DNA of 64,000 nt. It comes from Ylistrum balloti (Eukaryota). Below the pieces are notes generated by a model. That model made no database searches and was not told where the DNA came from. It worked only from the letters and a program-made list of their open reading frames with translations. The stretch covers positions 62,001 through 126,000 of the forward strand of contig NW_026782216.1 of assembly GCF_031769215.1 (NCBI RefSeq), given 5' to 3'. A program made the position numbers and the translations under genes. Numbering within the stretch: position 1 is the stretch's first letter; each line of letters opens with the position of its first letter. Shown here one piece after another: positions 1,444 to 40,527 of the stretch.

Positions 1444-4400
1444 TTAGTTTTTCTTGAGGTAGAAAACCAGGTCTGAACTGTCATATCCTGTGACACAGAA
1501 GCCCATCCCTGCTTTATGTACAAACTGTCCACCACACAGCTGCATGTCTGTGACACTCTCACCAAAACAAAACTCAATCTGTAACAATGAAGATAAGGAT
1601 TTATGTACCATTTTCCAGTAAAGGTAGGAGACAATACCAAGGGATGTATACTTTCAATTAGTTGTGATATTACAATGGAAGTTGCTGTTTACTGTAGGTC
1701 TAATAGTTATTGTATATCACAAAGATTATCCTCATCAAACTCTTCACCTCGCTTTTTGATGACACATTTGAGCATGCTCTTATCATACAATTCTTTTAAG
1801 GCTAGCATGAGAATGAATGTTATGGCAATGACTTGACAATCAATGATTACATTTGAATTAGATTTAATTATCCAATAAAAAATGTGTTGCATAACTGTAA
1901 TTTTAGAATCAATATCATGATTTGAATTATATTCCAATTTATGATTATCTTTTACTACTTAACAAAGACCCGTGTACGAAAATGTCAACTTTATAAAGGT
2001 TTTAACAAACAAACCTGATTTACCAACAAATAGTTGTCTCTAAAGACCACTTTAGTATGCATACAACAAATACCTGTCTCTGAAGACCACCTTTGTATGT
2101 ATATTACAAATATTTGTCCCTAAGACCACCTTTGTATGTATATTACAAATATTTGTCTCTAAAGACCACCTTTGTATGTATATTACAAATATTTGTCTCT
2201 AAAGACCACCTTTGTATGTATATTACAAATATTTGTCTCTAAAGACCACCTTTGTATGTATATTACAAATATTTGTCTCTAAAGACCACCTTTGTATGTA
2301 TATTACAAATATTTGTCCCTAAGACCACCTTTGTATGTATATTACAAATATTTGTCTCTAAAGACCACCTTTGTATGTATATTACAAATATTTGTCTCTA
2401 AAGACCACCTTTGTATGTATATTACAAATATTTGTCCCTAAGACCACCTTTGTATGTATATTACAAATATTTGTCTCTAAAGACCACCTTTGTATGTATA
2501 TTACAAATATTTGTCTCTAAAGACCACCTTTGTATGTATATTACAAATATTTGTCTCTAAAGACCACCTTTGTATGTATATAACAAATAGCTGTCTCTGA
2601 AGATCACCTTTGTATGTATATAACAAATAGCTGTCTCTGAAGATCACCTTTGTATTTATATAACAAATAGCTGTCTCTGAAGACCACCTTTGTATGTATA
2701 TAACAAATAGCTGTCTCTGAAGATCACCTTTGTATGTATATAACAAATAGCTGTCTCTGAAGATCACCTTTGTATTTATATAACAAATAGCTGTCTCTGA
2801 AGACCACCTTTGTATGTATATAACAAATAGCTGTCTCTGAAGATCACCTTTGTATTTATATAACAAATAGCTGTCTCTGAAGATCACCTTTGTATTTATA
2901 TAACAAATAGCTGTCTCTGAAGACCACCTTTGTATGTATATAACAAATATCTGTCTATGAAGACCGAATTTGTATTTATATAACAAATAGCTGTCTATGA
3001 AGATCACCTTTGTATGTATATAACAAATATCTGTCTATGAAGACCGAATTTGTATTTATATAACAAATAGCTGTCTCACCTTTGAAGATCACCTTTGTAT
3101 TTATATAACAAATAGCTGTCTCTGAAGATCACCTTTGTATTTATATAACAAATATCTGTCTCTAAAGACCACCTTTGTATGTATATAACAAATAGCTGTC
3201 TCTGAAGATCACCTTTGTATTTATATAACAAATAGCTGTCTCTGAAGATCACCTTTGTATTTATATAACAAATAGCTGTCTCTGAAGACCACCTTTGTAT
3301 GTATATAACAAATATCTGTCTATGAAGACCGAATTTGTATTTATATAACAAATAGCTGTCTATGAAGATCACCTTTGTATGTATATAACAAATATCTGTC
3401 TATGAAGACCAAATTTGTATTTATATAACAAATAGCTGTCTATGAAGATCACCTTTGTATGTATATAACAAATATCTGTCTATGAAGACCGAATTTGTAT
3501 TTATATAACAAATAGCTGTCTATGAAGACCGACTTTGTATTTATATAACAAATATCTGTCTCTAAAGACCACCTTTGTATGTATGTAACATATATCTGTC
3601 TATGATGACCACATCTATATACATATTACAAATACCTGTCTATAACGGCCGTCCTTATAAGAAACACCAGTATAAATCCACTTATTATAAATGAAACAAA
3701 TACCGGTCTATAAAGGCCAAATCCATAACAAATACATGTCTATAAATTCCACCTATAAAAACACACAACAAATATCTGTCTATAAAGGTCACACTTAAAA
3801 GTTCTTAACAATCCAATGTTTTATAATCACTCTAAATCCTTAATAAGTGTAATCTTTTTAATCAAAGTTTTCCTAAACTAACAAAACACATTTTTGTATT
3901 CCTCAGACAATCAGCATAAATGATTTGTCAAGAAATTGTATTGGGCAATGATTCATAATCTTTATTATTCTATTAACATGTAAACTCTACCTCAGGTGTA
4001 TCCCCTGGCTTCAACTTCCAGATCCTTGCATTGGTATCATCACTCACAGACAGAAGCTGAAATGGTCAATCAAAAGTACTGGTAGTTTGTTAATATGTAA
4101 ATATAAAACAAGTTCCTAGGGTGGGGACTGACTTCAGAGTCAGTCCTAGTAGCACAGATACATACGTACATTGTACTCTCAGCATTGGTTTAGGAAGTGT
4201 TGAAATCAATTAGGTTAAGGATGCAGATGCTTCTGACCTAGTTAGGTATGTTCTGAAAAAATATTTATTTCTTTATTCATTTTTGAGGCATGTTCCCTTG
4301 AGTGACATGGGCAACAGAGGGGGAATCTCCCCATTTACATGTAAGTTATTATGTATACAACACAAATTGGTCTAATACTTGTCAGTGCTTTGCATACAAT

Positions 4401-7400
4401 TTGTTGTGGAGAAAGAAACTGGCTTTGACTTTACAACATCTTACCAGTCCACTGTCCTTGGCTATGTCCAGTGCGTTAACCCAACGTACATGGGCACTCA
4501 CTTCGGCTGCTAGTCTTCCTGTGTTAGCGCTGTATACCTTTAACTGACCATTGCTGAATCCTCCTACGATTATCTTCTTCCAAAGGCACACACAGCTGCA
4601 GGGATTACTGAAAACATCATAAACTTTTAACATAAATACTATGAATATTGCACATGTCCAAAATTGTTTTCTGAACATCAGTGAATCATACAAAGCTTAT
4701 CAATGAAAGCTTTCTCATTACTATTTTAACTTACAAGAAGTTGTGATTTTTAAGATGGTGATCATGGGTGATTAAATGTCTTATACAGGTCAAATTATGT
4801 TAAGATATAAGTATGGACCATGGCATACATTATCTATATGGGTTGAGTAGACATTTGTTAACAAATGGAGACCTTTTGGATTTCAACTAGCTGAGTTTAA
4901 CACTGGTTTTTGAAAATCTCATAAGGTATGCCACTGCTCTACCGTCCTGTAAAAATATTTTACCTTCCTGTTTCACTTGAAAACCTCCTGCTGTTGTAAA
5001 CTAGACATTTCCTGTATAAACATTTTACTTTCCTATTTCTCTCGAAAACCTCCTGCTGTTGTAAACTAGACACTTCCTGTATAAACATTTTACCTTCCTG
5101 TTTCCCTTGAAAACCTCCTGCTGTTGTGTACCAGGGATTTCCTGTTTAAACCTTTTACCTTCTCATTTCTGTTGATAACCTCCAATTGTTGTGTACTAGG
5201 GATTTCCTGTGTAAATGTTTCACCTACTCATTTCTGTTGATAACCTCCAACTGTTGTGTACTAGGGATTTCCCGTGTAAATGTTTCACCTACTCATATCT
5301 GTTGATAATGTCCAACTGTTGTGTACTAGGGATTTCCCATGTAAACATTTTACCCACTCATTTCTGTTGATAACCTCCAACTGTTGTGTACTAGGGATTT
5401 ACTGTGTAAACGTTTTACCCACTCATTTCTGTTGATAACCTCCAATTGTTGTGTACTGGGGATATCCTATGTAAACGTTTTACCTACTCATTTCTGTTGA
5501 TAACCTCCAACTGTTGTGTACTGGGGATTTCCTATGTAAACATTTTACCTACTCATTTCTGTTGATAACCTCCAACTGTTGTGTACTGGGGATTTCCTGT
5601 GTAAACATCTTACTTACCCTTTTCATTGATATCTTCCCGCTATTGTAAACAGGACACTTCCTGTGTAAACAATGCACCTACCCATTACCCTTGATCACTT
5701 CCCGCTGTCGTATACTTGTTTCATCCTGGAGTGACCACACAATGATGCTTCCTTGTTCGTCACTACTGACCATTGTGTTACCTTCTGAGGCAATGTCACA
5801 TATTGGTTGTTTGTGACCTGAAATGAGCAATAATATAGCTTTAATTTTCAACAAAACTCTGGTCACAGATAACTTAACATATCATTAAATACCTTTTATT
5901 ATAGAAAATTTGTTAATTTTGATTTTTCTTCATCATTTCATCATAATCATAGTCATCATAATCATTGTAATCATATACATTCTATACACATCATGATTCA
6001 NNNNNNNNNNNNNNNNNNNNNNNNNNNNNNNNNNNNNNNNNNNNNNNNNNNNNNNNNNNNNNNNNNNNNNNNNNNNNNNNNNNNNNNNNNNNNNNNNNNN
6101 NNNNNNNNNNNNNNNNNNNNNNNNNNNNNNNNNNNNNNNNNNNNNNNCAACACTGAAGGCAAAATTTACAATAGAAGCTGATATAAATAGTTCAAAGTAG
6201 ACTGATTTAAAACTGACCTTAGTAAGTATAATTCAGTGCCAGGTATTTTTGAAGTCCTGGTTTTCTTCAATAATTATTTTTCTACGTTAAAGTTTCACAC
6301 AATTTTCTGCATCAAATTAGGCAGAATTATGCTTAAATTATTTGCTGAAAGGGCAAAAATCTGCAGATGGAAAAGTTTTCACTGGTATTTAAAACATCAG
6401 TTTAACCATGGTATACATTATCAGTAACTCACCTGTCAAACTTTCCTTCGTGGTAATGTTGGTTCCTTTTGGTGGAATATCAAAAACTGCTATCTCACCC
6501 AACTGTGTTCCTGAGAGCATTAAAAAGAGCATTATATTGTACTACAGGAAAAGTTATTTCCCTTTCTCTTCTAAATATTAACAACAAGAAAGCCTAAGTG
6601 GCACTTACATGGTAAATAAATTTCAAAACTATTATGTGCATTATTATTCTTCTTTGAATGTAAGTCCATCCATATCAATGACTGTCTTCACAGAAATGTC
6701 CGTTAATAAACACTTCCCCTGAGTCAGGATGTTTACATTTACCCATAAACAGAACGTTACATTTTACATGTCCTATTGAACATGTACAATGCTTTTGTAT
6801 TACCCTCCCCTACAAGAATATGTCATATGATGTAAGATCCACTTATTATATATACATATCGTTTAGGTTTTCAGGCTTTACTTTCAATATAAGTCATTGA
6901 CTTACCGACACACAGGAAATTATCACCTATACATGCTATTCCTCTTCCAAAATTACCATACTCTGGAAAATAATATCATCATTGAATAAGAGCTCAAAAA
7001 ACAGTGACCCACTTAAGGTCTGGCATTTCAATCTTAAACATATTTTATTCAAGGTTATCATAGTTTACAAGTTATTTCTGAAATAAACATCATAATTGTC
7101 GTCTTTCTAAGGAAAATGTCCTCTTTCCATTTTAAGGGACGATCCTAGATACATTTCAATCAGATAATGAACCTAGAAATTTGAGTCTAATGTCATGGAC
7201 CTAAAATTTGAAGTCCTATGTCTTGGACCTAGAACTTTCGAGTCCTTTATAATCTCCCATGTCCTGAGTAATGGACTAAGACCTCCATCTCCCATGTTCC
7301 AGCTGATCAGTTAGGACTTTTAAGATCCCTAATTGATGGAATATGACCTTTCCCAAGTCCTAGCTGATGGACTAGGATCTTTATTGAGATATTGTACCTA

Positions 7401-10400
7401 CATCATTAAACCCTATGTGATGGAACAAGTTCAGATTGCAAGTTATTGAGATGAGCAAGGACCTACACATTCAAGTGCTATCTGAGAAACTATTCTGAAA
7501 ATTGGATTCCTCTTAGACAAGTATGAAGGTGAAAAGACAATGAAATAAAGTGGCCAATTTTTTTGAAATGACAAAAGGACCCATGTAAATGTAATCATTA
7601 CCATTTTATCAATGTACAGAATCAGCTGACAGGATCTGTAGTTGTACAAATAGGCTGTATTATTTTTTAACTTTGTTAAATTGTTAGGCAGTACATTTAC
7701 ACATATAATGTGATGGTTTTAGGGTTCCTATTTTTCGCCATTGCTGTGCATGAAATAAAATTGCAAAAAAAAAAAAAAAAAAATGAACCTACAGAAGAAT
7801 ATACTACTGCTAAAAAATCTTGTTATTTCATTACCTCTTGTACAATGTATACCTCAGTGAAAGTATGCTTCACACTGGTCATTTGCCTGATGAAGATGAC
7901 CAAAAGGTCACACCTACAAGAAAATCTGTTTAATATATATTACCAACCTGAAGAAGATGTTCCGAGATTAAGCTTACCTGATGCTTCAGAGCTGTGAACA
8001 TTGCCCAGGGCATGGAAATATATCATTGCTGCTCCATCATACTCATAGATCTACAACATCAATGTGTTCATGTGTAAGTTACTCTGAAGGAATACTGGTT
8101 TACAGTGTACTTATGCTAGTCTAGTATGTATAGGCTAAATGAGGTTAAAAATGTTATAAAATGACAACTTACCTGTATTCCCCGAAGTGTTGTTAGTACT
8201 AGCACTGTCCTGACTGGTAACTGTATCCATTTACACTGGAAAACATATCAAGATAAAATGTCATTATAATCAATGGTGAAACACTTAATTGTGATAGGTA
8301 TTGATTCTCAAACTATACATTTCAATTTTATTTTCAATACGTTTTTGCTACTATGATACAAAAAACCTGTTGATATGGTTGCTCTAAAGTAGATGCTTAA
8401 CAAAATGCCTCCTAATTTTCATAAATTTTCTATAAAGTAAGAGAGAATTTTCTTTTATTCACTTTAAAATGACCTTTTCTGTACATGTAATACTATTGTA
8501 TTGTCTTGTAGTTGTCTCATAGATTTTTTTTGAAGCCATTATTAAGTAACCTCATGTTACTGACAGCAAGTGTATAGTATTAAAGATAATTAAAACAAAG
8601 AAGGTGCACATGAGGCACCTTGTATTGGAGCTAAATTGTAACAGTGTAGCCCTGAAACTTACCACATTAATTATATATCATTATCAATGTACAATAACAC
8701 AAGAGAAGATCAAGGTCAAACTCATCACAAGATACATGTACCAATATGATATGAAACACAATAGTTCTTTGTTTTGGAAACTGGTCTATCACCCTGACAA
8801 CAGCAAAGGTCATAATAAAGTAAAGTCTCCTTGAAGTAACTGGTAGCTACCCCAGTGAACAACATACAGAAGGCCCATAATATCCTATCCTGAGCAATTT
8901 TAGTAAAGTGAGTGTACTGTATTGCCAAAGGACATAACAGAAAATGATAATATACAATATTACAATATTTTCTTAAATAATACATATCTGGATACATGAG
9001 CCACAACACCTATCATTAGCATAGTGACTAAGAACAGATTAAAAAAAAAAAGAAGAAAATACAATATACAGAAAAATCTTCTGTTCCCAGCTTTCATTTA
9101 TTCCATAGGTATATATCTTTATGCCAATGGCATGTAACAATAAAAAAACATGTTGGCTCTGACCCATTTTATGCATAAATTCTTTATTGTAACATGACCT
9201 TATGGGCCAATGCAATTAACTTCTGATGAGACTTGGTAACAATGGCTGCCCTACCAAATTGAAACTTTAGCTACTTGGGCCTTTGTTAAATTTAGAGAGA
9301 AAACTGCAATATTGTCATTTATATGGGATTTTTAGGCAGCAGAATTTTGTAAGTGCGTTTTCCATCATTCTGAGGTATTTCTACATTCTTAATGAAGCAT
9401 TTTATCAAGTGAATATATGCTAAAGACGATAAGCCAATGACTTGTTGACAGTAGATTTACAAGTATTGAAATGCCAAGTTTGAAATCCTGTACAGTATTG
9501 TAGGTTTGAATATCAATAAATTGCAGTTTAGCTACAGCACTATATTTTTTCATGTTGTGTCACACATAAACTCCCACAATTGCCATTGTCAGCTTCGTGT
9601 GACAAATCTCCATGTTTGTAAAAGCAGTATATCATAACTGGCCATGAACAGGCAACAGACACAAGGCTTTTTGTGTCTGTAATTATGATCAGTTTTAGCT
9701 GTCTATTAAGACAACCACATCTTAATCAGACATGAATAACTTACGGTATACAAGACTAAGTAGTATTTTACAAAAAAGGAGCCAGGTTTTCCTTTGCTCT
9801 TGTACTTTTACCTGGGAGGGGCTACAATAGACAAGTCATGAGACAATTGGACAGCAATGGACACTGCAACATTTGTTGGTCCCAGCTAGGCTATGGTGTG
9901 GTTTGACACTTCCAACATGTAGTGGGTTGTGTTATCAGACAACTGAGATACAGACCAGTCTGTGGTGATGTAGCTGTGTCCTTGTGCAAGACAATTAACC
10001 CTAAATGCTAAGGATGGCATGGGATGGGCTCTCATGCATTGTTTATTGAGGTAGTTGTAGCTACCAGCTAATGCAAGGAGACCACCACCTCAAAATCGCA
10101 CTGCTGACTGGTTAATGGGACGACAAACCCAGCAAGCAAACCTTAAGTTAACTTAAACCTACTGTCAAACTAAATCATATGTATCATCATTCAATGGACA
10201 GGTAATGTTTTCTACTGATAGACAATGTACAGGTATCAGGTACTGGAACACTGTCTATATATCAATAGGGCAAATGTAAACAACTGAGACATACCTGGTC
10301 ACCTCCATGGTGTGCACATTGAAAAAATGGATGGTGAATCTAGCAAGCTGTTAAAACGAATATTTTTTGTCATAAGACACCATTTCCAGTGAATTGGTTG

Positions 10401-11387
10401 AATTCTTCTTTGCAATTTTTGGTACTTGCATCCTTTAAGCATGTTCAGATGGTGAGACATGAAATCTCCTTAATTCATGATTAAAAATACTTCATATTTC
10501 ATTTGCTTCTACCATACAATTCACATTCATTGCGAGTTATATTATTTTTTGCACAGAAACATCATGATAAAAGTGCACCCTGCCTGAATCTGCATCAATG
10601 GGATGCTTACCTGCAGTCACCATAATGAGTGATTGACGCCATATTGGGTGGACTCTCTATAGAGGTTGTTACTTAAATAGTAAGTGTTCAAGTGAAAATA
10701 TGTAACGATGAAGTTTTTAAAAAATGCCTCATTTTAAGCAAATATGTGAAAATTATTTACTTAACTGATTTACTTGACTTGTCATCCACTTTTTTCATCA
10801 ACACAAAAGAAATGTGACTGGACCTCACCTGCATGTTTACATTTGTCCTATATACGTATATGTATAATCAGATTTGACCTTATAGCTAAATCTGCATTCA
10901 TAGCCACATTTGCTGTGGCTTATGGCTACAATTAAATCAAAGCTACGTGTAGATGTAAACTCGACCCATCAACTAAGTCTGTGTCCAGTCCTGTGTATTA
11001 CATGCTTATGTGTAGACTTCTGCATTCAAACATATGAGTTCTGTGGTCTTTGCAGGTAGACCTATATAAATCTGTTAATTAAAGCGAAAGAAATCTTTCC
11101 TCAAGATGACCACGATTCATAGAGTATAAATGTAAGCTGAAGTGGGCATATTTACATACTTGTAAAATCATTGGAGTAGTCTGGTGAGTCGCTGATGGTT
11201 CCTTACAAATCACCTGCTTGTTAGTCACTGTCGATCCGTCAGGCGTAGAGGAAATAATGTTTACCACAGCTTTATGTACGACCGCATAATTCAATGAGTC
11301 CTTCTCTGGAGTTATAAGTGCAGATAGGTTGTTAGCTAATGCCGAAGCACTGCTTTTAAGCGTAAGGGGTTTCTCTCGGCGATACAT
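1444..11387 (-). CDS. WDR54: WD repeat-containing protein 54, 9 coding exons, 332 aa
   Basis: Exons 11160-11387, 8173-8235, 7978-8050, 6906-6962, 6433-6510, 5682-5817, 4445-4607, 3991-4056, 1444-1578. All are GT-AG with matching phases and sum to 999 nt ending in TAA. Translation (MYRREKPLTLKSSASALANNLS...CKWIQLPVRTVLVLTTLRGIQ IYEYDG...FGRGIAC...VFDIPPKGTNI...GHKQPICDIA...SAHVRWVNALDIA...LLSVSDDTNARIWKL...QLCGGQF...VTGYDSSD) aligns by eye along its whole length with human WDR54 as I recall it. Confidence 0.93.
2020..3790. repeat. 40-bp satellite, about 40 copies, in the last WDR54 intron
   Basis: Unit AAAGACCACCTTTGTATGTATATTACAAATATTTGTCTCT, with blocks of variants (GAAGATCACC...ATAACAAATAGCTGTCTCT; ...CTATGAAGACCGAATTTG). 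Edges are degenerate. Confidence 0.95.
4960..5676. repeat. 65-bp minisatellite, about 11 copies, WDR54 intron 6
   Basis: Unit CCTACTCATTTCTGTTGATAACCTCCAACTGTTGTGTACTGGGGATTTCCTATGTAAACATTTTA (period 5466 to 5531). Ends a few bases from the exon 6 donor. Confidence 0.9.
6001..6147. other. Assembly gap (147 N)
   Basis: Run of N inside WDR54 intron 5. The flanking exons join in phase, so no coding exon is needed in the gap. Confidence 1.
9880..10145 (+). mobile_element. Degenerate CORE-type SINE
   Basis: CORE-like GTGTCCTTGTGCAAGACAATTAACCCT, decayed tRNA head (GGTTTGACAC), tail GGGACGACAAACCCAGCAAGCAAAC. Lies in WDR54 intron 1. Confidence 0.55.
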
Positions 11388-12057
11388 TTTAACTAAAAGT
11401 GAACCTCTAAACTTTCTCCTGTTGCTCGGTACGCTAAATTCTTGCACATGTGCATTAATGAATTTCCGTTCCATGATTTCCGGGTCGCTTTCAATTTAAC
11501 GGTTTATGCGAAAGAAGAAAGTCGAAATTACTGTTGTTAATGTTTACATTTTTGTTATGTAGGGTTGTCTGAAAGAGGTTACCAGGTACAATACTAAAGA
11601 CAAATTAACTACATAAATATTGTTACGAATAGCACATTTGTTATATCCGTTGTTAACCTAAACGAAATGGGCTCGATCTCATTTATTCATTGGGTTAGTT
11701 TAGAGACGTATATATATCGTGCTATATATGTCTCTGGTTTGTTGAATCATCTTTGAAATTAAGTCAGACCTATTGTTAATATATTATTTTTCTATAAGAA
11801 TTGGATTAATATATCTCGAAATCTTTATAAGTAAATGTAGGACTGCGAAACCTCTACCTGAAATGGGCCATTAATTTTTTAAAAACAAACCGGTTTGTCT
11901 GCACAAACAAAAGCGACCATTAAAAAAAGATCCGGACCGGAATTCGTCCTGTATTTACATGTTCATGAACCTTTGTAAACACTTCCGCGTTTTCGCCCAA
12001 CGAGGAAGTGGAATTTCGAGTGAAGACCACAGGACATTTGAGTAATGCTCTTCCGAT
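11388..12057. promoter_or_regulatory. Putative bidirectional promoter WDR54/DOK
   Basis: 670 bp between divergent ATGs, locally CpG-rich. ETS-like cores TTCCGG (11478-83), ACTTCCG (11981-87) and GGAAGT (12004-09). Confidence 0.7.
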
Positions 12058-25600: not shown

Positions 25601-26377
25601 TGAAAAAGTACAGGGTAAATGAAACCACATGTTCCGGAAAAGAAGTCGTCTTCTGCTTCATTGACGACACCAACCACGTAAAATCATGATAAATCCAAGT
25701 AATGTTGCATTCCCAAACCAGATCAAGGTAAACATCTTCAGCAACTAACGAGCGTCAAACATGTGCAAGTTCATACCACATAATTGACCCCTAAAACTCC
25801 CATTATCTCCATTAAGCTGCTGCATCTCTTAAGAGTGTCAAGAGTTTGTCAGATGTTGACATCTTGCATGAAAATTGTGAGGTCTGGAAGAGAACCTTGA
25901 ATATCCAATCAACTGTGACATGTAAATTTCAATCTGGGGATGTAGGAGTTGCTGTACCTAGTGACTATAATCTGATTATAGGTTTGACAATATAATCAAA
26001 TAATCAATATTGAATATCCAATTATAAACATTTAAAATCAGGATATTAACATTTAAACCTAAATACGTGAACTTGTACCGCATTTGGTCATTCACATTAT
26101 TATGTTGGGTAATTACAAGGAGAAAATATTGCTTAAAAGTATTTCTTCAACGAGTATATTTCATTGTTATTTATGTAACCATCCAGCAAATATCTAACAA
26201 TCAAATTTATCTATTGCAATATATCCAACTATTTTATAAACTATTACTTACTTGGTCACAGGATTCATTTTCTTATATCAAATTGAATGTTTCTTACTCC
26301 CTTGATCTACAATCCTTTCAAAATTAAAGTCAAGATTTATAAACTTTCTACTGCTTTCAAATTTGAAAATTTCAATA

Positions 26378-30011: not shown

Positions 30012-30385
30012 TTAAAAGGTGACTGAAGATAATCAAACGGGACCAAAAAATGCCTAAATCTAGATTAGGAGGTGCACTAACCCTGTAATTCAATGCATTT
30101 CGTTATTTTCATATATCTAATAATTTCTGAATAACGTGAATAGTATATCCTGAGAACTAAGCAAATGGTTGTTTCATACCTCAGTGATGTCAAAGAGTGG
30201 GATTCCACAAATTTCTTTTCAGCTAAATCACTAAAACAAGATTGGATAAGTGAAGGTATCAACAAACCTTTTCTAAAAATCTGATGTTTCGGTGCAGGTT
30301 GAATGTCTTGCTCAGGAAGATTCATGAGGTTATCATCAAAAATTTCCTCCAAGTTGTCTAATGACAGATCCTCCAGAACTGGTTT
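30012..30385 (-). CDS. CCDC172: Tentative additional 3' exons of CCDC172 (30268-30385 and 30012-30022)
   Basis: A phase-0 donor CAG|GTCTGT after 31782 matches acceptor TTTAG|AAA at 30385, giving KPVLEDLSLDNLEEIFDDNLMNLPEQDIQPAPKHQIFRK. A phase-1 donor AAG|GTTTGT and acceptor TTATCTTCAG at 30023 then give ...RKVTF*. The joined total is 987 nt (328 aa). No homology support for these exons. Confidence 0.5.
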
Positions 30386-31760
30386 CTAAAGGTATACATG
30401 GGTGTAATAGAATTATTAAAGAAAGACTTTCTGAATCCAGAATATATTCTTCTCTGTCAAGGGTTATATCATTAATCTCAGTTAATGTCTAGTTATATAT
30501 TTCTACCTGTGTAATACTGGTCTGTTTGGGACAACCCGTGGCATGACCCTAATTTCCTGGACAATAATATTCATGAAGCACTCATCTCTATCCAAGTAAA
30601 ATCTTAACATAAATTATTAATTTATTGATATATTATTCTTGGCTTTCCAGAATTTAGCGAGGTTATATTGCTTGTTGATGTTTCTTTCAGCTTTCTGGTA
30701 ATCTTAAAAGCCAAACGTTTTAATAGTCGAAAAATATGCCCAGTAATTTTATAATGTAATGGTGATAAGTATGGTTTAAGTAACAACAACTTTGCCATAT
30801 CATCAGTGATTTCCATATACAAGGACAAAAAAATCATATTACACTCCTCGTAAAAGAGTAACACCTACTGATGTCTCTGATTGGTAGGACTCAACAGAAG
30901 TATCGGTGGTGAAATTTGACTTGCAGATGCGATTTCGTGTGGACACACCTAGGGCATCTTCATTCTGTCGAAGGTGAGTATAAAGCTGACAAAATGCAGT
31001 CATTCTTTTGCTTGTGAAATAAATATGTAGATGTATATCATTTTTTATATCAAATTTATCATTTGATATATTTGATTACAAATTGATATAGATCCGTGTA
31101 TAAACTTACTTTCAATTGAATATTAGTAATGCATTTCATTTAGTTCAATTGTCTCATTATTAAATGTCCTATCTTCCATAGAAGATATATGCATATTTTA
31201 CAGGGATTAAGGATTACATAAGCTTTAATAGACCATGTTAACATGAAATGCATATGACTTAAACTACTCAACTAAACACTAATTATGAACTGAAATAAAA
31301 CCAAAATTTGTTTTGGCTAACCCCACCCATTCTGTAAATTCTCAAACTTAGGACATCTAAAATTTTGTATAATGAATTGCAAAATAACATTATATGAATA
31401 TTTTCAGATGAAAAGATTTAAATGAACATAATCTAATTCCTGGAAATCAGCACTGCATCAAAGGTACATCACTTGGTACAAATTTACAGAGCTTTAAGAT
31501 AGATATCGTTCATGTGACTTCTTGGACTTTAAAACCTGAATATCTTTTTAAAGAACTCGGTAGCAGCTACAGACTTATTTACTTTAATAGTACAGTATTT
31601 ATCTGTTTCACTTTGGTGATTTAAAATCGAAGTTGCTATAATGATGTATAGACCTCTAGTAGCAGGCTAAACATGAACTGTCCAAACTTCGCCTGTTTCA
31701 CCAGAGGTCAGGAATAATGAACAACATATTGGATTCGAATATGTACACCCTGAATGAGTT

Positions 31761-34700
31761 TCATCTCTCTGTTTTACAGACCTGAGAGGACACTTTAGTT
31801 GCTTGAGAAGTATTTTTCTGCTGATATTTTGTCTGTTGTTGTTGCTGCTGTTTTTGTTGATGTCTGTTCTTGATTTTTCTTTGCCAGAGCTGTTGTTGCA
31901 GAGCCTGAACTTGTTGTTGCAGGAGGTGACATGTCCGTTCCAAGTCCTCGTCCTTCACAGAGTCTATTTCTTTCTGCAGTCTGTTGTAAATATGATGAAA
32001 TACAAGAAATAAGTTGGTAAATAAAAATCATCCATCTTGTTGATTCATTTCAGCTGTGATATAATTATGAACAATCAATAAAGAATGAATTCTTGTTGTC
32101 CAATACTTTTAATACAACTGCTGTTGAGTAAATAAATAGATGTTACATAAATAATAAGCAAATAAAGAAAATTATCCTAGTTGATTTTGACTTAGTTTTC
32201 TTCTTGAAACCTTCCACAAATACTCTGCCACATATCCCGTATATTATTCATTAGAATAGCTACCAATCATGGCCAACTTAACACTACCTGATGAATTCTG
32301 CATCAGTCGTTGGCAACAACTGGATTTTTTGTTTTTCTTCTTCTTGCTTTGCCAACTTCCTTTTTTCTTCCGCAACCTTTTCACAAAGTTCTGAAGAAAG
32401 ACTAATCTAAGTGTATACTTGTGCAGTAGTAGTCTATTGGAGATATATCTTATCCCTTATTTCAAGCTTGGTATCTTAGTAATATTCAAAATTTTGAGAA
32501 GCCATTACATCCTTCAGAAATTGAACTCATCATTAAACATTTGAAGATAGTGCACACGACTCGTGTGACAAAATCCTTCAAAAATGGTAACAGTCTACTC
32601 TTCAATTACAAATTCTGCGTAATTTTGTTGATATTATTTACTGCCAGGTATATGGTCTCAATTAAGATACATTATCAATACCTAAATGCTGGGATTTAGT
32701 AGTTTGCAGCAAATCCATGAGGTAATCTTCTTTGTCTTTCAGCTTTCTCAGTGATTCCACACGTTCCTCATAGTTCTGAATATCTGTAGAAAACAACATG
32801 TTATTGGACATAAATTCAACACCGATAATTAAAAATTTTGATCTGGCAATTAAATGATAATTACTTGATAATTTAAGTACATATGATTCTCCTTTGTCAC
32901 ATTTACTCTCAACTCTTAGTATTAGAAAGCAGCTATAATCATGAACCCAATGTCAAATACAGATAACCCCTACTCCAATTAGTATCCGTGTACATGAATT
33001 AATAGTAGTGCTACTATTCACTTATGTGTCTTTTGAACAATTTTTGAGATTGCTGATGGTAAATATCGCTGTGGGACTTTTTACCCTCAAGGTTTGTCAT
33101 AACCTGCAATCCATGTTTAAATTTGTCAAAATATAGAATACACACATATACTTGCTATTCTAAAATTAACAGATAAATGAAAATAATGAAATTATGCATT
33201 GAATTATTTAGTTAGTTCACCTCCCTGTCAGGATTTTGACATTCTATCTGTCACTTTCAGACTTTCTTCAGCCATTATCAAAGTTTCAAACTTTTAGGCC
33301 CCTAGCATCACTGAGGAGTCATATGAGGAAACATCTGTAGTGTTGTATAAATTACATATTTAGCTCTACTGTAACTAATTCTAAATTTGAGGAAAATCAA
33401 AATGTGAATAATGATAATAAATGATGCCATTGTATTTTCTTACTCCTTGATGATATCTATAATATCTCCATTCACTAGGTGCATTTATTTTACAAGGCAA
33501 AATTCTTTCAAATTTTGGGGTTTTTTTTTCCCAAACAAAAGAAAGTTAAGCTTCTGTTGGTACAAGGATATTAATATTTCATATTTTGTTCATTTATAGA
33601 AATGAGATATTGATACTTTCAATAATCAAACAAATGAAATTATTGAGGTCCTAGTCACAACTTGTTCCCAATGTATGTTGTCTGCTCTAAAGACATATCA
33701 TAATGTTTTTTAACTGTGGCGATAGAGCCACAGGGTCTAAAAATCTGTAACCAAGTCTACCTACCAACTCTATCAGTATAATAGTATACCCATATGACAT
33801 GAATTGTTTGGGAAAAAAACCTTGCTGCAATTTATCTTTCTCTCCTGATAATTCTGCTACTTTGCGAAGTGCTTCCTCTCTTCGTAGATTTGCTCCATTA
33901 CCAAGAAGCCCAAACTCAGTGACAAACTTCTCCACATCTTGGCAAAATGTCTCATTCAAATTGAGCTGCTCTTCTTCTAGATGTTCCTGTGACATAAACA
34001 CTTGATTGTGTCACAATTGTTCTCATCATCTTTATTAATTACTTTAAGTATAGCTTATATTTATACATGTTAAAATCTCCAAATTTCCTAATCTAATTCA
34101 TTGATGAGAAACATGGTCCTCCCAACAAACAAATACCTTATATTGTTTAGTTGTTATGCCAGGTAGGTAAACCATATTGAACAAACATACTCTGCCATGC
34201 TAAAGCAATAAATGTCCTCTACTATCCTTGATACTTAAGGAATTATGTTTAATATCGCTCTCTGCACACCTGGAACATGTCATGACTACAACGAATGTTT
34301 CATGTGCAACACCTTGTGGAAAAGACTAGTTTGATCCATTGATATACATCAAAAGAATCTCAAGGTTGCATAACGGTATATGGTAATGGCTTTGAAGCTA
34401 GGTGTCGCTCCTTTCTAATGACTCGTAAAGATGTTGCTGTTTGGCTTTCATTTTTAAAAAAAAGATACAACTGTTTTGTAACTGATTTCGATGTAATTTT
34501 GCAATTAAAAGGTGGGACAATGTGACAACAGTTTCATTACCAATGCATGTTAAATGTGTTTTAGTCATTTGTAAGTGCATGAGGTTTGATTAAAAATCCT
34601 GTAAGAAATGCTAAGAGTGCTAACCATGATTTCTATAGAGTGATCTTGACCCAATAACCCTCAAACTCATACCTGTTGGATAATAAAACAGCAACAGGAA

Positions 34701-37700
34701 AATCCTAACATGTGAACATTATACTAAAATTCAATAAAATTAGAGCATGATATGAACAAAAGAAATACTTCCACAGAGACTCCAAGGGAAAATTATGAAA
34801 TGGAAAATTCACAATTGAAATCATCAAGCTTATCATATAGCTTGGTGGAAAGTTGTCCATATTGGTTTCATTGTAGGAAAAGAATGAGATAGGTGGCTAA
34901 AGATGAAGAGTCTGTTGTGTCATTAATTCCAATTTTGGTGGGAATAGACAAAGGGCAGCTTTTGGTGTTCTTTAAAATTAACATAACATTAATTCCAATT
35001 TTTGAGTAAACAATATCACAGTAAGGTTGTGACCCAGATTTAATTGTAATAAGAATGGAATTATGAGGTCAGGACAAACGTTTGGTTGAACAGTTAGGCT
35101 AGATAATGCTAAAACACTGTTTAAACAGAGTCTTTTGAAGTTAGGAATCCAATATGCATGTTGAGGGCCATATCCTTATAACTGAGGGGCAATCTACATG
35201 ATTGTAACACTGAAGCATGATTAGCTAGTTTTTTCTTCTTTAGAAAGGTATTTTAGTGCATTGAAAGAGTGAAGTTTGATGAAAATCACACAAGAACTAA
35301 GGCTGCTAGAGCACTGACAATGATTTTCTAATAATAGGAACAGCAACCATGACCCAATAACCCTGAAACTTAAACTTGTATATATTAAGGTTGTTTGTAT
35401 GATCAAAATCCCACAAGGACTGAAGTGCCTAGAGGGCTGTTAACATTTTTCTTCAAGAATAACTGTGACCTTGACCCAACAACCTGAAAGCTCGCACCTG
35501 TTCAAGACATTTTAGGTCTTTAAAAGTGAATGAAGTTTGATGGTATCAGTGGTTTCAGGAATAATGAGAAATTGTACTATAATCATATAGAACTCAAAAT
35601 TGTTAACCAATTAAATCATCTTGGTATGCTTTTAATCTTTAATGGAAAATTTTATGTTACCCCAAAACATGTGACTGATCAAGGGAAAGGGGCATATTAC
35701 TCTGACTAAAGTAAATTAAAAATCACAAACTAATATTGTGACACAGATATCTGTTTTTGACACATTTGTCAATAGTATTGTAAGGCACAGCTTGGCAATT
35801 TTGGGATTTCACAAAGCTTTATATGCAGAAAAAATGCATATTAATTTTTGCAAAAACTTGTGAGTGTAAACAAAAAAAAATGTAAATGTCTAGTATGTTT
35901 TGCTGTAAGACCACTACAACTTTTAACTTGTAAGAAGCTAAGAACGCTAAATTATTGGTTAAAGCTGACAGCTTCAAATAATTGCATTTTGAAATAATGT
36001 TTTGACGAAAGGACAGCATCTATTGGGATTTGGATATTGAATATCCAAGCTGAACAATTTAGGAATAAATTATTTATGGAATACAGAGTGTAATGAGAAA
36101 ATAGCATTCAGCTTGATTAAACAAAGATTTTACGACATTTATCAACAGAAGATATTATCCGATATTAGCAATTATTCTTTTTTTACAATACTACCTGTGT
36201 AAGCAAATAGAGGAACACAGTACAATCACACAAGACTTTGGTTAAGCTCACGCAGTCTTAGATTGAATATAAAGATAGAGAAATCAGCTGAGAGAGAGAA
36301 AAAAGTGTACTGTGGCAAACAAACGATATCGAGGATGACTTCCATTTTATTCTCAAATGTTATTTTTATAACAATTTCTGAAGTACATACATTAATCCAT
36401 ATTACAGAAGACCAACTGTATTCAAATTGATAGAATTATTAAGTGTCCAAACTGTAGCTGAATAGAGTTAATTAGGGAAATTCCTTTACCCAGTGACAAA
36501 ACAATGCAATGAAGTTATACAGCTATGTACTGTACAGTCTGCACCATGTTTGTCTACATATTTTCAAGTTTCTGAATGAGTCATTGCTTCTATTATCATC
36601 ATCATTCCTAAAGAAACCAATGTGTATGTAAAAGATTATTGTACATCAATATAATACGCTGTGTTATTCCAATACATTGAACAACGCAGAGAAATACAAG
36701 ATCATTGATATATTGGACCATTATGTTATTCAATTAAAAATGCAAGTCATTTAATAGAATCAGTAATTATACTAGATTATATTACATTAGAAGTATATCA
36801 TATTACATAACCATTATACTCTTATTGTATGTGGTAATAACTTGTGTTATATCATAATATTTTGACAGTTAACTTGAACATCATATCGCAAGTTGGTGCA
36901 TTTATTTGAAATTGAACATTTTATCCATTACTTAAACATGAATTATTATCCAAGTGTTATACTACTTTGTTATGTACAAGATAAGTACTGGTATACTATC
37001 ATACTGTGTGTCATTTGCTTTATGTCAATACATCTCTCTGATGTAAAACACACAGAAATAAAGAAGGAATCAAAAATGAATGAATGCTCAAGGAATGAAG
37101 CCACTTGAGTGCTGACAATGCCTGATGGTATGTACGTTCGTACTTGGATGGACAAATTTCCAATTCTATACTTAAACATTTGATTCGATAACTTGGTTTT
37201 CCCAAGAATCCCTCTGACTTTCCACATTTTAGGCTTTTAGCATCACTGACAAATCCTAGAAGAATGAAGCAGCTGTATGATACAGTTTAAATCATTATTT
37301 AGCATGTACTGCACTAATCACAAATTTGTATGTAAAGCTGTATTTTTTTATCTTCTGTACAATTATCTGATATGCTGTCATTTTCCAGTATAGACAACAG
37401 TATTTTCATAAAACATTTCAGTTCATAATGTAATAGCGCTTTAACAGAACACTACAACCAAATTCTTATACACATGAAAAAGTTATGTAATACAAATACT
37501 TAATATCGTCATTATCTGTCAGGTATGAATTACACCAATTACGTCAACGTTTGTAAAGTATATGAATGACAAATAAATTAGAACCAGTAAGTTTTTTGTA
37601 ACAGCAAATAACAGCTTTTAAACATTCAATAGGTGAATGGAAACCTAGCTACACACTTAACAAATACTTATAGCATTGCATGTCATGAGCTGGTCAGAGT

Positions 37701-40146
37701 CCTGGTTCTTTTATAAGACGTCTTCACAGTTACTATACTTCAAGGATTTACATTCATCATAAACATGTTATTTTGTGCCATTTTTACACAATAATTGTTT
37801 GCTTATTTTGAAATTACAAGTTTTTATCAACTATTGATTTGTTCTTATGACCCATGTAGGAGATGTAAAAGAACAAACCTGCTGTATCTCACTGCATGTC
37901 ATAAGAGGCAACTAGCTGGAGAGTACCACTTACATATTGGGAATTTCTCCTTTGACGTCTTGTTTACTACTGTTTGGGGAACATAAGATGGAGGCTCCAA
38001 ATAAAGGGTCTGCTGCATTCCGCCGCATTAACGTATAGGTGATTAAAAGTGGGGCCCATGCAGAATTGGGGGTTTTCTTCTTTGTTGTCTACTAATGGGG
38101 ACATTGAAGAGACCAGAATAGATCTGCAGCTCCCATTACAACACTAGGAAACTTAATAATTTCCTTTCCTTTCTAATTGCTATTTATTTCTGTACTTCAT
38201 TTTCCACTCTTGATGCCCCTTTTGACACCATCCTCATATAGCCTATGGACTTTCAACTTTCTTTAACTGCTTAGATACCAGCGTTCATTTTACATAGGAT
38301 TATTACCATGTATTATTGTACTTATTAAGGTAATCTTATCACCTTTCTGTTTAAAAGTCCATAAATCAATATCATCAATCTCTTATTACCTTAAAACACC
38401 CTGAATTGCACTGTATTGTATTGTAATGTATTGAATTATATATTGTATTGGTACCAAGAAAATGAGAAATGTGGCAGAATCAAGAGCTTTTACTGCAACT
38501 GACGGTACAATATGATTATTCAAAAACTGTTTTTATTATTATTATCATTTATTCATAACTCATATGTTGTTATAGTAAATGTTTAAGTTTTTTCGATGAC
38601 AATACTTGACGACTTGATGAGACTCGGTTGTATTTGATGGTTGATGGACTCATTCAAGGACATGGAAAAAATATGGTATACCAGTTGACTTTCTAATTCT
38701 TTTCTTTCTCTCTGGAACTGAGATTTCTGGCTCATAAGAACCTCTTTCTTGTTATTAATCATCATAAGGTTGATTTCTTCATGGTTTAGATCAGTCACCT
38801 GGCAAACAGAACATAAAGATGGTACAAATGACAAATACTTTGCTGCTTAAAATGGGATTATAGGTGTAATATTCAGACTTCAAATAGAGCCTTCTCCCTA
38901 TATCTACATACAGATCTTACAAGAAAGTTAAAGACGATCCACATGTTTCCAGTGGTAATATTGACATGAGATAAAACAGTTAGTGTTAGATACATATGCA
39001 AAGCTTGCACCATCCTCGATACTCTAGGATTTATGCTCTCTATCGCTCTCTGTACCCCTGTAACATTTCACGGTGAATTTGAAGGTTCCATGTGCGACAT
39101 CTTGTGGATAAGATAAAATCCTTTGATATACATCAAACAAATCTCCAGTTTGCATAATAGTATATTGTACTGGCTTTGAAGTTCTGTGATTAGTCAGTTG
39201 TGTTTTTAATCAGCTCTAAGCCAATCAAATCACTTTGCTTGAGCCTTCAATTTTTTCATTATTTTTTCAAACTGTTTAACATATTACACAGGTATGCCAC
39301 CTCAATATTTTCAAGATTTAAACTCTAGATTGCTTAAAATATGAACCCTATCAGGCAAATGAATGTACATGTATATTTTTTTACGTTTCAATTTGTTGAA
39401 TAGCATTAACTTTGCAATAAGCTCATGTCATGACTTTGTTGACTATGTGACTTCTTCACAGCCACTTTCAAGTGTCAACACACTGAAATGATGTGGAACC
39501 AGAATACCTATCTGATTGGCACCCATCATTAAAAAAGTCTTAATGAATAAAAGTGTTTTTGTTCTTTCTTTCTTTGTTACATACCTTAACTTTGAGTTCC
39601 TCTTGGAGCTCATCTTTTTCTTGTTTTAGCTTGATAATATCTGCTTCTTTTTGTCTTATCTTGCTCTTAACTGACAACACAATTTATTTGGTATCATAAT
39701 AAAACTGTCTGTCACCTTTGCTGTAACTTGATACCAATCTCGATATATGTTACAATAAGTGAAAAAGCATAAAATTGATTTAAATTCACTTTCAATCAAT
39801 AATGTGTATTTACAAACAATTCAAATTGAATATCAATATATATAAGTTAAGGCTTAACACACACACACTGCCACTTAAAGTCTAGTCCCTACTCCCAGTC
39901 CCAGTAAGAGTAGTATATCTTCATAACTCTATTACATGATCATGAATTAAAGACAAAGCTGTAAAACTTTAAGTTTAAGTAAAATGTTCAATACTTCCAT
40001 ATAAAACTGAACTTGCTCTTTCAAAATTTAAATACTATCAGATCTTTTTACAATGGTTCAATACATATTCTTAATAGAGTTAATGGAAATAGCAATTCTA
40101 CACCCACAAGTGAACAGTCTGTGTTTTACTTCTATTGAAATATTTC

Positions 40147-40182
<36 letters not shown>

Positions 40183-40527
40183 CAACAACAACAGTTATGC
40201 CATGGAAATAATTCCTCAATATTGATTACTTATTGAAAATGAAGAGGGTTTATCCATTTTTTGAACACTGACTTACGGAAAATGTATTTTGGACGATCTG
40301 TGGCAAATTCGGGCCAGTTGCCCGAGTTAAATAGGATAATCTGAGGTCGATATCGTCTGATCAAAATATGCGGAATGCGGGAGAGGGCGCTTATGGCGAG
40401 TGCAGACATGATTTGACCATGTTAGATTAGGTGTTTCCTCACCTTCTTGTAAATAGCTCTTTCTTTCTTGTGCTCTGCGTTCCGAATCAATAATCTGTGA
40501 AAACAAGTCGTTCAGAGAGGACGACAT
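31761..40527 (-). CDS. CCDC172: Coiled-coil domain-containing protein 172-like, core 7 exons
   Basis: Exons 40443-40527 (MSSSLNDLFSQIIDSERRAQERKSYLQE), 39585-39670, 38682-38798, 33821-33986, 32682-32783, 32288-32390, and 31761/31782-31980 (RLQKEIDSVKDEDLE...Gln-rich tail). All are GT-AG with consistent phases. The N-terminus and LPTTDAEFIRLQKE resemble human CCDC172 (SLESLFQHII..., PQNDAECLRLKKE) as I recall it. Confidence 0.82.
34215..34400 (+). repeat. Dispersed repeat, copy 1 (copy 2 at about 39005-39180)
   Basis: Shared blocks ATCGCTCTCTG, CTTGTGGA, TTGATATACATCAAA, TTGCATAA and TGGCTTTGAAG appear in the same order in both copies. Confidence 0.6.
34590..35545. mobile_element. Degenerate repeat family with GTGACCTTGACCCAATAACCCT units (HINE-like internal repeats)
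   Basis: Three related copies at about 34620, 35345 and 35465 (GACCCAATAACCCTCAAACT / GACCCAATAACCCTGAAACT / GACCCAACAACCTGAAAGCT). Confidence 0.45.
36215..36500 (+). mobile_element. 3' fragment of a non-LTR retrotransposon (L2/CR1-like ORF2 C-terminus)
   Basis: Broken translation DIEDDFHFILKCYFYNNF*STYINPYYRRPTVFKLIELLS...LGKF, preceded by LSSRSL-IE-like sequence. This matches the post-RT Cys/His motif of LINE ORF2. Confidence 0.7.
40151..40180. repeat. C30 homopolymer in CCDC172 intron 1
   Basis: 30 consecutive C at 40151-40180. Confidence 0.9.

What the first reader, a model, noticed from the sequence alone, without database searches (positions are those of the whole stretch)
1444..40527. 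WDR54-DOK-CCDC172 are neighbours here: probable ancient bilaterian microsyntenic block split across human paralogons
Seen: the three genes are consecutive in this invertebrate window, with no other gene between them. Recalled knowledge (not checked here): human WDR54 and DOK1 both lie in the same gene-dense 2p13.1 cluster; DOK2 sits beside GFRA2 on 8p21.3; CCDC172 sits beside GFRA1 on 10q25.3; and 2p13, 8p21, 10q24-26 and 5q are paralogous segments of the NK-cluster paralogon. Inference: an ancestral WDR54-DOK-(GFRA)-CCDC172 block was kept intact in this lineage and resolved by differential loss after vertebrate genome duplications. DOKs dock on receptor tyrosine kinases including RET, the GFRA co-receptor partner, so the linkage may be functional.
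Basis: partly seen in the sequence, partly recalled or inferred. Interest (0 to 1): 0.75.

Follow-up and report, generated by a model that had tools for sequence, protein, structure and literature searches.

The report
Old DOK-CCDC172 pair, new WDR54 neighbour
In this scallop, WDR54, a DOK adaptor gene and CCDC172 do lie side by side, but only DOK-CCDC172 (originally with DDX41 on DOK's other side) is an ancient animal gene neighbourhood that vertebrates later split between chromosomes; WDR54 was found beside DOK in no other species examined.

Summary
The window is Ylistrum balloti (scallop) contig JAUZWB010000468.1:62001-126000. WDR54 (- strand, CDS 1444-11387), a DOK1/2/3-type docking-protein gene (+, 12058-19650) and CCDC172 (-, 29568-40527) are consecutive. 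Only a decayed Tc5/pogo transposon and tandem repeats lie between them. The N gap (6001-6147) sits in a WDR54 intron, and the two flanking exons are phase-compatible.

DOK followed tail-to-tail by CCDC172 also occurs in Argopecten, Lottia, Ptychodera and Branchiostoma. In Lottia, Ptychodera, Branchiostoma and Acanthaster, DOK's head-to-head partner is DDX41, not WDR54. DDX41 also abuts DOK3 in a lizard and in human. The inferred ancestral bilaterian block is therefore DDX41<->DOK-><-CCDC172. Human DDX41-DOK3 (5q35.3), DOK1 (2p13.1), DOK2 (8p21.3) and CCDC172 (10q25.3) all lie in the published NKL/MetaHox paralogon, which fits differential loss after genome duplication.

WDR54 beside DOK was found only in Ylistrum. 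It is real there, because contigs from independent runs span the junction. It is absent within 10 kb of DOK in every other species that could be read. No GFRA-like gene lies in the block in any invertebrate.

This is an ordinary but clean case of ancient microsynteny. The scan has reported other ancient blocks in this genome, but not this one.

The parts
1444..11387 (-). WDR54 coding span (332-aa product in the NCBI annotation)
   Evidence: gene call, PF21031; Pfam WDR54 on exons; stop codon at 1444-1446, ATG at 11385-11387.
11160..11387 (-). WDR54 exon 1 (76 codons, phase 0 donor)
   Evidence: Pfam WDR54 profile positions 1-76, E 7.6e-10; boundaries read from the sequence.
6433..6510 (-). WDR54 exon just upstream (in the gene) of the assembly gap
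   Evidence: Pfam WDR54 profile positions 133-165; AG/GT boundaries, ends in phase 1.
6001..6147 (.). Assembly gap (N), inside the WDR54 intron 5818-6432
   Evidence: The flanking exons are phase-compatible and contiguous in the Pfam profile. The gap was not filled or looked up.
5689..5817 (-). WDR54 exon just downstream (in the gene) of the gap (WD40 blade)
   Evidence: WD40-type Pfam hits; starts and ends in phase 1, reads G-HKQPICDIAS....
4445..4623 (-). WDR54 exon
   Evidence: Pfam WDR54 profile positions 207-267, E 2.2e-12; boundaries.
11388..12057 (.). 670-bp spacer between the divergent WDR54 and DOK start codons (putative bidirectional promoter)
   Evidence: Spanned by single contigs of four independent runs. 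Only its last ~90 bp are conserved in Pecten and Argopecten.
12058..19650 (+). DOK1/2/3-type docking protein gene (533 aa, P0001); coding exons 12058-12108, about 12787-13161 and about 18473-19650
   Evidence: tblastn of P0001; PH and IRS-PTB Pfam hits; closest PDB matches DOK1 and DOK2 PTB; tree.
21600..21670 (.). About 70-nt non-coding element conserved in four scallops, 2 kb past the DOK stop codon
   Evidence: blastn; alignment A1; no Rfam family. Function unknown; possibly DOK 3' UTR.
26579..28030 (+). Decayed Tc5/pogo-type transposon relic in the DOK-CCDC172 spacer (not a gene)
   Evidence: HTH_Tnp_Tc5 split over two reading frames; ORF fragments; no gene called here.
29568..40527 (-). 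CCDC172 coding span (369-aa product). Exons with cross-species matches: 40438-40527, 38667-38798, 33813-34019, 31803-31991, 30261-30373
   Evidence: Gene call with PF28385; tblastx to the CCDC172 genes of Ptychodera, Branchiostoma and Lottia; blastn to Argopecten; start and stop codons.

Best explanation
The three-gene row in this scallop combines an old part and a young part.

Old part: DOK followed tail-to-tail by CCDC172. This is what remains of a bilaterian block, DDX41 <-> DOK -> <- CCDC172, in which DDX41 and DOK start back to back less than 1 kb apart and DOK and CCDC172 end facing each other 3-10 kb apart. The full block survives in a limpet, an acorn worm and amphioxus.

Young part: in pteriomorph bivalves the DDX41 side was broken by rearrangement. 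Different genes now occupy the place facing DOK's start: WDR54 in Ylistrum, an Sfi1-like gene in Argopecten and a CANIN-domain gene in Mytilus.

In vertebrates the block was copied by the two genome duplications and thinned by differential loss. DDX41-DOK3 stayed together (with DDX41 inverted), DOK1 and DOK2 stand alone, and CCDC172 stands without a DOK. All four sites are on arms of the NKL/MetaHox paralogon.

Shown: gene identities, gene order and orientation in each species, and DOK orthology. Inferred: the ancestral state (by parsimony), the loss scenario in vertebrates, and the reason for retention. My best guess for retention is slow rearrangement plus a shared divergent promoter for DDX41-DOK, not any functional tie among the proteins.
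For: Gene identities.

DOK -> <- CCDC172, same orientation:
- Ylistrum, spacer 9.9 kb
- Argopecten, 6.5 kb
- Lottia, 4.9 kb
- Ptychodera, 5.0 kb
- Branchiostoma, 2.9 kb
CCDC172 exons match across phyla by tblastx.

DDX41 <-> DOK, with 407-920 bp between coding starts, occurs in Lottia, Ptychodera, Branchiostoma and Acanthaster. The helicase is DDX41 by phmmer against PDB (E about 1e-39 against 1e-8 for the next DEAD-box family), and its exons are 74-96% identical across these loci.

Vertebrates: in the lizard Elgaria, DDX41 lies directly upstream of DOK3. In human, DOK3 is at 177,501,904-177,511,274 and DDX41 at 177,511,577-177,516,961 (PMC12989897).

DOK tree: the DOK4/5/6-type clade is split off with 100/99 support, vertebrate DOK1/2/3 form one clade with 100/100, and the window gene sits among the mollusc DOK1/2/3-type genes.

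Human positions and paralogon. In Lottia the gene beyond DDX41 is PPP2R2/B55. By recalled knowledge, its four human paralogues lie on 8p21, 5q32, 4p16 and 10q26.

WDR54 is absent from every other locus. The WDR54-DOK junction in Ylistrum is confirmed by independent contigs.
Against: Flanks were limited to 10 kb. Nothing could be said for Pecten, Mizuhopecten (DOK at the scaffold start), Mytilus downstream, Acanthaster downstream or the shark. WDR54 may lie just outside the flank in other scallops.

The pair is lost in a mayfly.

Only two spiralian classes and no annelid or brachiopod were sampled.

CCDC172 identity rests on a precomputed Pfam hit (PF28385) and on cross-species exon matches. 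My Pfam copy gave no hit on single exons, and the Atlas lead was weak.

Human GFRA1-CCDC172 adjacency and the strands of the human genes are recalled, not checked. Holland et al. treat 2p and 8p as one arm of the paralogon, so the exact duplication history of DOK1 and DOK2 is open.
Confidence: 0.78

Rival explanations
1. One reading: WDR54-DOK-(GFRA)-CCDC172 as a whole is an intact ancestral bilaterian microsyntenic block.
For: The three genes are adjacent in Ylistrum. Human WDR54 and DOK1 lie inside one 594-kb interval of 2p13.1 (PMC7272322). GFRA2 lies beside DOK2 on 8p21.3 (PMC2576333).
Against: In eight other informative species DOK's upstream neighbour is never WDR54. It is DDX41 in four invertebrates of three phyla and in a lizard. 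No WDR54 exon occurs in any locus. No gene is called in the DOK-CCDC172 spacer of any invertebrate.
Confidence: 0.07
2. Loose-linkage version: WDR54 has always lain in the wider chromosomal neighbourhood of DOK (same ancestral linkage group, tens to hundreds of kb away). A local inversion brought it next to DOK in the Ylistrum lineage, so the human 2p13.1 co-location is a remnant of that loose linkage. This is compatible with the best explanation.
For: Human WDR54 and DOK1 are less than 600 kb apart, with LBX2, TLX2 and LOXL3 in the same interval.
Against: There is no direct evidence. The position of WDR54 in other invertebrates could not be looked up, because its exons are too short for the length-limited protein search and joined models were not to be sent.
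Confidence: 0.35
3. The WDR54-DOK adjacency is an assembly artefact (chimeric contig or a wrong join at the N gap).
For: It is seen in one species only, and there is an N gap inside WDR54.
Against: The junction (10367-12353) is covered by one contig in each of four runs from two studies, with SNPs that show other individuals. The gap is 5 kb away, inside an intron, and WDR54 exons on both sides are in the right order, strand and phase.
Confidence: 0.02
4. The DOK-CCDC172 adjacency in several phyla is a coincidence or arose independently.
For: None beyond the general possibility.
Against: The same two (and three) genes occur in the same order and orientation in Mollusca, Hemichordata and Cephalochordata. 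With roughly 20,000 genes per genome, a given neighbour on a given side is expected about once in 20,000 per lineage (inference).
Confidence: 0.01

Closest known systems
Conserved ancient microsyntenic pairs (CAMPs) of Irimia et al. 2012 (PMC3514665) and the bilaterian microsynteny blocks of later catalogues
   Same: Unrelated genes kept as neighbours with conserved orientation across phyla. The divergent DDX41-DOK pair has a spacer under 1 kb, which that paper describes as the signature of a bidirectional promoter.
   Different: This block is not named in the main text of that paper, and its supplement is not held, so prior listing could not be checked. DOK-CCDC172 is convergent (3'-3'), not the enriched 5'-5' class, and it is invisible from the human genome because vertebrates split it.
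NKL/MetaHox paralogon (2p/8p, 4p, 5q, 10q; Holland, Booth and Bruford 2007, PMC2211742)
   Same: Human DOK1, DOK2, DOK3-DDX41 and CCDC172 lie on its arms. The pattern is the usual one: one invertebrate block, several thinned vertebrate copies.
   Different: The members here are not homeobox genes. 2p and 8p count as one arm in that paper although each carries a DOK, so an extra duplication or a split arm must be assumed.
Other ancient blocks reported by this scan in the same scallop genome (ZGLP1-UBE2U-FDX2; KDM3-REEP head-to-head)
   Same: The same kind of result: an old core of neighbours plus a scallop-specific addition.
   Different: Different genes and a different contig; this block had not been noted before.

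Membership tests
WDR54 (Pfam PF21031) | Match to the WDR54 profile over its full length | tested here: met
   Exons hit profile positions 1-76, 133-165 and 207-267 (E 7.6e-10, 2e-3, 2.2e-12). The annotated product of 332 aa carries PF21031, whose profile is 334 long.
DOK family, DOK1/2/3 type | N-terminal PH domain followed by an IRS-type PTB domain | tested here: met
   PF00169 (E 1.7e-9) and PF02174 (E 2.4e-11) on consecutive exons. Best PDB matches are DOK1 and DOK2 PTB, then DOK5, then FRS2/3.
DOK family, DOK1/2/3 type | Falls on the DOK1/2/3 side of the split from DOK4/5/6 in a phylogeny | tested here: met
   Careful ML tree of 45 PH+PTB regions. The DOK4/5/6-type clade (jellyfish, annelid, walrus DOK5-like) is separated with 100/99 support, and vertebrate DOK1/2/3 are monophyletic with 100/100 (names). 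DOK7 was not among the hits and was not included.
DOK family, DOK1/2/3 type | Long C-terminal tail with tyrosine motifs (YxxP sites that bind RasGAP/Nck in DOK1/2; recalled knowledge) | tested here: inconclusive
   The tail of about 290 aa has 8 Tyr but no YxxP. Lottia has 4, amphioxus 5, and lizard DOK3 has 0.
CCDC172 (Pfam PF28385) | Match to the CCDC172 profile | tested here: met
   There is a precomputed unmarked hit (E at most 1e-5) on the annotated 369-aa product, and likewise on the neighbours of DOK in four other species. The local Pfam copy gave no hit on single exons. The joined model was not searched.
CCDC172 (Pfam PF28385) | Orthology to vertebrate CCDC172 (reciprocal best hit or phylogeny) | not tested
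   The exons are too short for the length-limited search, and no vertebrate CCDC172 sequence was in hand. Only invertebrate-to-invertebrate exon matches were obtained.
Ancient bilaterian microsyntenic block | Same neighbours, same orientation, in at least two distant phyla on both sides of the protostome-deuterostome split | tested here: met
   Met for DOK-CCDC172 (Mollusca, Hemichordata, Cephalochordata) and for DDX41-DOK (Mollusca, Echinodermata, Hemichordata, Cephalochordata, and Vertebrata with DDX41 inverted).
Ancient bilaterian microsyntenic block | WDR54 as a member of that block | tested here: not met
   WDR54 is adjacent to DOK only in Ylistrum. It is absent from all 11 other loci (10-kb flanks), and DOK has other upstream neighbours in eight species.
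Vertebrate paralogon split (differential loss after 2R) | Vertebrate descendants of the block lie on arms of one recognised paralogon | not testable with these tools
   Literature only: 5q35.3, 8p21.3, 2p13.1, 10q25.3, and the paralogon definition. The lizard DDX41-DOK3 adjacency was shown directly.

The most novel reading that the evidence does not exclude
DOK's start may sit at a divergent (bidirectional) promoter that is repeatedly reused as a rearrangement breakpoint and re-formed with a new partner. Within 1 kb of DOK's start codon, and facing away from it, lie DDX41 (four species, ancestral), WDR54 (Ylistrum, 670 bp), a CANIN/SLF2-like gene (Mytilus, 244 bp) and SRP72 (mayfly, 732 bp). 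If breaks fall preferentially inside such promoters and swap partners between two divergent pairs, DDX41 in Ylistrum should now face WDR54's former partner.
Probability: 0.2. Interest if true: 0.55.

Novelty: new member of a known kind. Interest (0 to 1): 0.38.

Why it matters
It gives a named, easily checked example of an ancient three-gene neighbourhood, DDX41-DOK-CCDC172. Vertebrates cut it into complementary remnants on the NKL/MetaHox paralogon. That helps to assign CCDC172's region of 10q25 to the same ancestral segment as the three DOK loci.

It also corrects the proposed block: WDR54 and GFRA are not shown to belong to it.

The changing partner at DOK's divergent promoter is a small test case for how bidirectional gene pairs are broken and re-formed.

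No new biology of the proteins follows from this.

Tried and rejected
- Word-indexed protein search with the PTB exon found only four scallop DOKs. The exhaustive representative search was needed to reach other phyla.
- Looking for WDR54 from its own side was not possible. Its exons are at most 76 aa, the length window of the search for homologous proteins excludes the 332-aa protein, and joined models were not to be sent.
- Pfam on CCDC172 exons gave no hit. The ESM Atlas feature search on one exon put CCDC172 second at 0.79, which is only a weak lead.
- Look-ups for Pecten, Mizuhopecten and the shark DOK3-like gene were uninformative: no genes within 10 kb, or DOK at the scaffold start.
- Full-text searches for WDR54+DOK1+synteny, CCDC172+GFRA1+synteny, DDX41+DOK3+synteny and GFRA1+CCDC172+PNLIPRP3 returned nothing.
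- Supplements of three synteny papers are not held.
Only exons fixed by eye or by cross-species matches are reported.
- Rfam found nothing in the window.
- No RNA run holds this stretch, so expression and transcript ends were not checked.
- Misassembly of the WDR54-DOK junction was considered and rejected.
Full report
SOURCE AND OBSERVATION

A protein search with the large PTB-bearing exon returned a 100% identical 533-aa protein of Ylistrum balloti (P0001). Its contig (GCA_031769215.1, JAUZWB010000468.1) aligns base for base with the window at an offset of 2057, so the window is 62001-126000 of that record.

The NCBI gene calls over window 2058-29650 list three genes and nothing else:
- a 332-aa WDR54 (PF21031, minus strand, coding start at 11387)
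- the 533-aa PH+IRS protein (plus strand, 12058-19650)
- a 369-aa protein with PF28385 (CCDC172, minus strand, coding end at 29568)

My own Pfam scan of single exons found WDR54 on three exons, and PH and IRS on the DOK exons.

The 9.9-kb spacer between DOK and CCDC172 holds only a Tc5/pogo-type transposon relic, whose HTH_Tnp_Tc5 domain is split over two frames, and a tandem-repeat array.

THE GAP

The N run at 6001-6147 lies between WDR54 exons 6433-6510 and 5689-5817. The first ends one base into a codon, and the second supplies the other two (G|GT = Gly). The reading continues ...KESLT-G-HKQPICDIAS.... The Pfam profile positions leave no hole: 133-165, then a 43-residue exon, then 207-267. 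The gap is therefore intronic and hides no exon. I did not fill it or look it up.

IS THE WDR54-DOK JUNCTION REAL?

WDR54 and DOK start 670 bp apart on opposite strands. Because no other species shows this arrangement (see below), I checked the assembly. In four public runs from two studies, one contig of about 1.96 kb covers 10367-12353. That stretch includes WDR54 exon 1, the spacer and DOK exon 1, and the contigs carry SNPs that mark other individuals. The junction is real.

WHICH DOK?

An exhaustive search with P0001 gave 152 relatives, and 30 of them were named through their clusters. A careful maximum-likelihood tree of 45 PH+PTB regions shows:
- A DOK4/5/6-type clade (a jellyfish, the annelid Owenia, a walrus 'DOK5-like') separated from all the rest with 100/99 support.
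- Vertebrate DOK1, DOK2 and DOK3 forming one clade with 100/100 support.
- The window's gene nested in scallops, bivalves and molluscs (98/95), among the remaining bilaterian genes. These include amphioxus 'DOK2-like', acorn-worm 'DOK1-like', starfish 'DOK2-like' and arthropod Dok.

The best PDB matches are the PTB domains of DOK1 and DOK2. Its tail has eight tyrosines but no YxxP motif.

NEIGHBOURS OF DOK ELSEWHERE

I looked up the genomic place of DOK orthologues with 10-kb flanks.

| Species | Upstream of DOK | Downstream of DOK |
|---|---|---|
| Lottia gigantea | DEAD helicase (-), start 920 bp from DOK's | CCDC172 (-), 4.9 kb |
| Ptychodera flava | helicase (-), 407 bp | CCDC172 (-), 5.0 kb |
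| Branchiostoma floridae | helicase (-), 475 bp | CCDC172 (-), 2.9 kb |
| Acanthaster | helicase (-), 719 bp | nothing called in 10 kb |
| Argopecten irradians | 949-aa Sfi1-like gene (-), 3.9 kb | CCDC172 (-), 6.5 kb |
| Mytilus | CANIN-domain gene (-), 244 bp | nothing called |
| Mayfly | SRP72 (-) | a spondin gene |

Pecten, Mizuhopecten and a shark were uninformative.

The helicase is DDX41. Exons of the acorn-worm and amphioxus genes hit human DDX41 at E about 1e-39, against 1e-8 for DDX3X. The Lottia, starfish and lizard exons are 74-96% identical to the acorn-worm exons.

The scallop CCDC172 exons match those of Lottia, amphioxus and the acorn worm by tblastx, on the same strand.

No WDR54 exon occurs in any of the fetched loci, and no DDX41 exon occurs in the window. 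In Lottia the gene beyond DDX41 is the PP2A B55 subunit (PPP2R2; PDB E 1.8e-45), not WDR54.

INFERENCE FOR INVERTEBRATES

By parsimony, the protostome-deuterostome ancestor had DDX41 <-> DOK -> <- CCDC172. The scallop keeps the DOK-CCDC172 half. The DDX41 half was broken in pteriomorph bivalves, where the gene facing DOK differs between Ylistrum, Argopecten and Mytilus. WDR54 beside DOK is therefore most simply a recent juxtaposition in the Ylistrum lineage.

No gene, GFRA-like or other, is called in the DOK-CCDC172 spacer of any invertebrate. In amphioxus one unnamed 301-aa gene lies inside the CCDC172 span.

VERTEBRATES

In the lizard Elgaria, DDX41 lies directly upstream of DOK3 on the same strand.

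Published human coordinates:
- DOK3 at chr5:177,501,904-177,511,274 and DDX41 at 177,511,577-177,516,961, which is 303 bp apart (PMC12989897).
- GFRA2 (21.6 Mb), DOK2 (21.8 Mb) and XPO7 (21.9 Mb) on 8p21.3 (PMC2576333).
- WDR54, DOK1, LOXL3, LBX2 and TLX2 inside one 594-kb 2p13.1 deletion (PMC7272322).
- CCDC172 next to PNLIPRP3 on 10q25.3 (PMC12409172).

Holland, Booth and Bruford define the NKL/MetaHox paralogon as 2p/8p, 4p, 5q and 10q (PMC2211742). All four remnants lie on it. This fits duplication of the block and differential loss: DDX41 kept with DOK3, CCDC172 kept where DOK was lost.

An ancestral vertebrate order GFRA-CCDC172-DOK-DDX41 would explain GFRA2-DOK2, GFRA1-CCDC172 and DOK3-DDX41. 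That order rests partly on recalled map data (GFRA1 beside CCDC172, and the strands of the human genes) and is inference.

WHY IS THE BLOCK KEPT?

This is not shown here. DDX41-DOK has the sub-kilobase divergent layout that Irimia et al. associate with shared promoters, which could resist breakage. DOK-CCDC172 is convergent. It may simply persist in slowly rearranging genomes, and it is lost in the mayfly and resolved without apparent harm in vertebrates. Nothing supports a functional RET/GFRA-DOK reason for the linkage.

NOVELTY AND LIMITS

No paper in the library links these genes by synteny. The supplements of the microsynteny catalogues are not held, so an anonymous prior listing cannot be excluded.

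The main limits:
- Flanks were capped at 10 kb.
- No RNA runs hold the stretch.
- No annelid or brachiopod was sampled.

This is a clean new member of a well-known kind of feature, with one part of the original claim (WDR54, GFRA) not borne out.

Noticed in passing
window 21600-21670: An element of about 70 nt, 2 kb after the DOK stop codon, is nearly invariant in Ylistrum, Pecten, Argopecten (two copies) and Mizuhopecten, while the surrounding non-coding DNA does not align. It contains a short hairpin-like inverted repeat (TAGCTTG...CAAGCA). There is no Rfam match.
   Followed up: partly
window 11388-12057; L003, L010: DOK's start codon faces a divergent gene less than 1 kb away in most species, but the partner differs: DDX41, WDR54, a CANIN/SLF2-like gene, SRP72. 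This may reflect partner exchange at a bidirectional promoter.
   Followed up: partly
L008 1-1569 (+): In Lottia the gene beyond DDX41 is PP2A regulatory subunit B55 (PPP2R2). By recalled knowledge its four human paralogues lie on 8p21, 5q32, 4p16 and 10q26, the same paralogon as the DOK and CCDC172 loci.
   Followed up: partly
window 2025-3645 and 4963-5645: Two long tandem-repeat arrays (units of about 40 nt and 65 nt) fill WDR54 introns and create long spurious ORFs on both strands.
   Followed up: no
window 27909-28723: A tandem array of a 57-nt unit gives a 260-aa repeat 'ORF' (…GLSVNTHRNIPVGLNDQWS…) next to the transposon relic. No gene is called there.
   Followed up: no
window 40829-44894 (+): A gene ending in a C3HC4_3 RING finger (E 1e-15) starts about 300 bp from the CCDC172 start codon on the other strand, forming a second head-to-head pair in the window. 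It is the subject of a separate first-stage note.
   Followed up: partly
window 50425-50943 (-): An exon with a KY-like Ig-like domain (PF23265, E 8e-13). It is the subject of a separate first-stage note.
   Followed up: partly
window 62000-64000: A GC-richer stretch (48% GC, GC skew -0.55) made of proline-rich repeat 'ORFs' (…LPTIVLRVYPLPPPYNSLTCLPP…); a tandem repeat of unknown meaning.
   Followed up: no
L005 26409-27761 (+): In amphioxus a 301-aa gene with no Pfam family is called inside the span of CCDC172, on the opposite strand.
   Followed up: no
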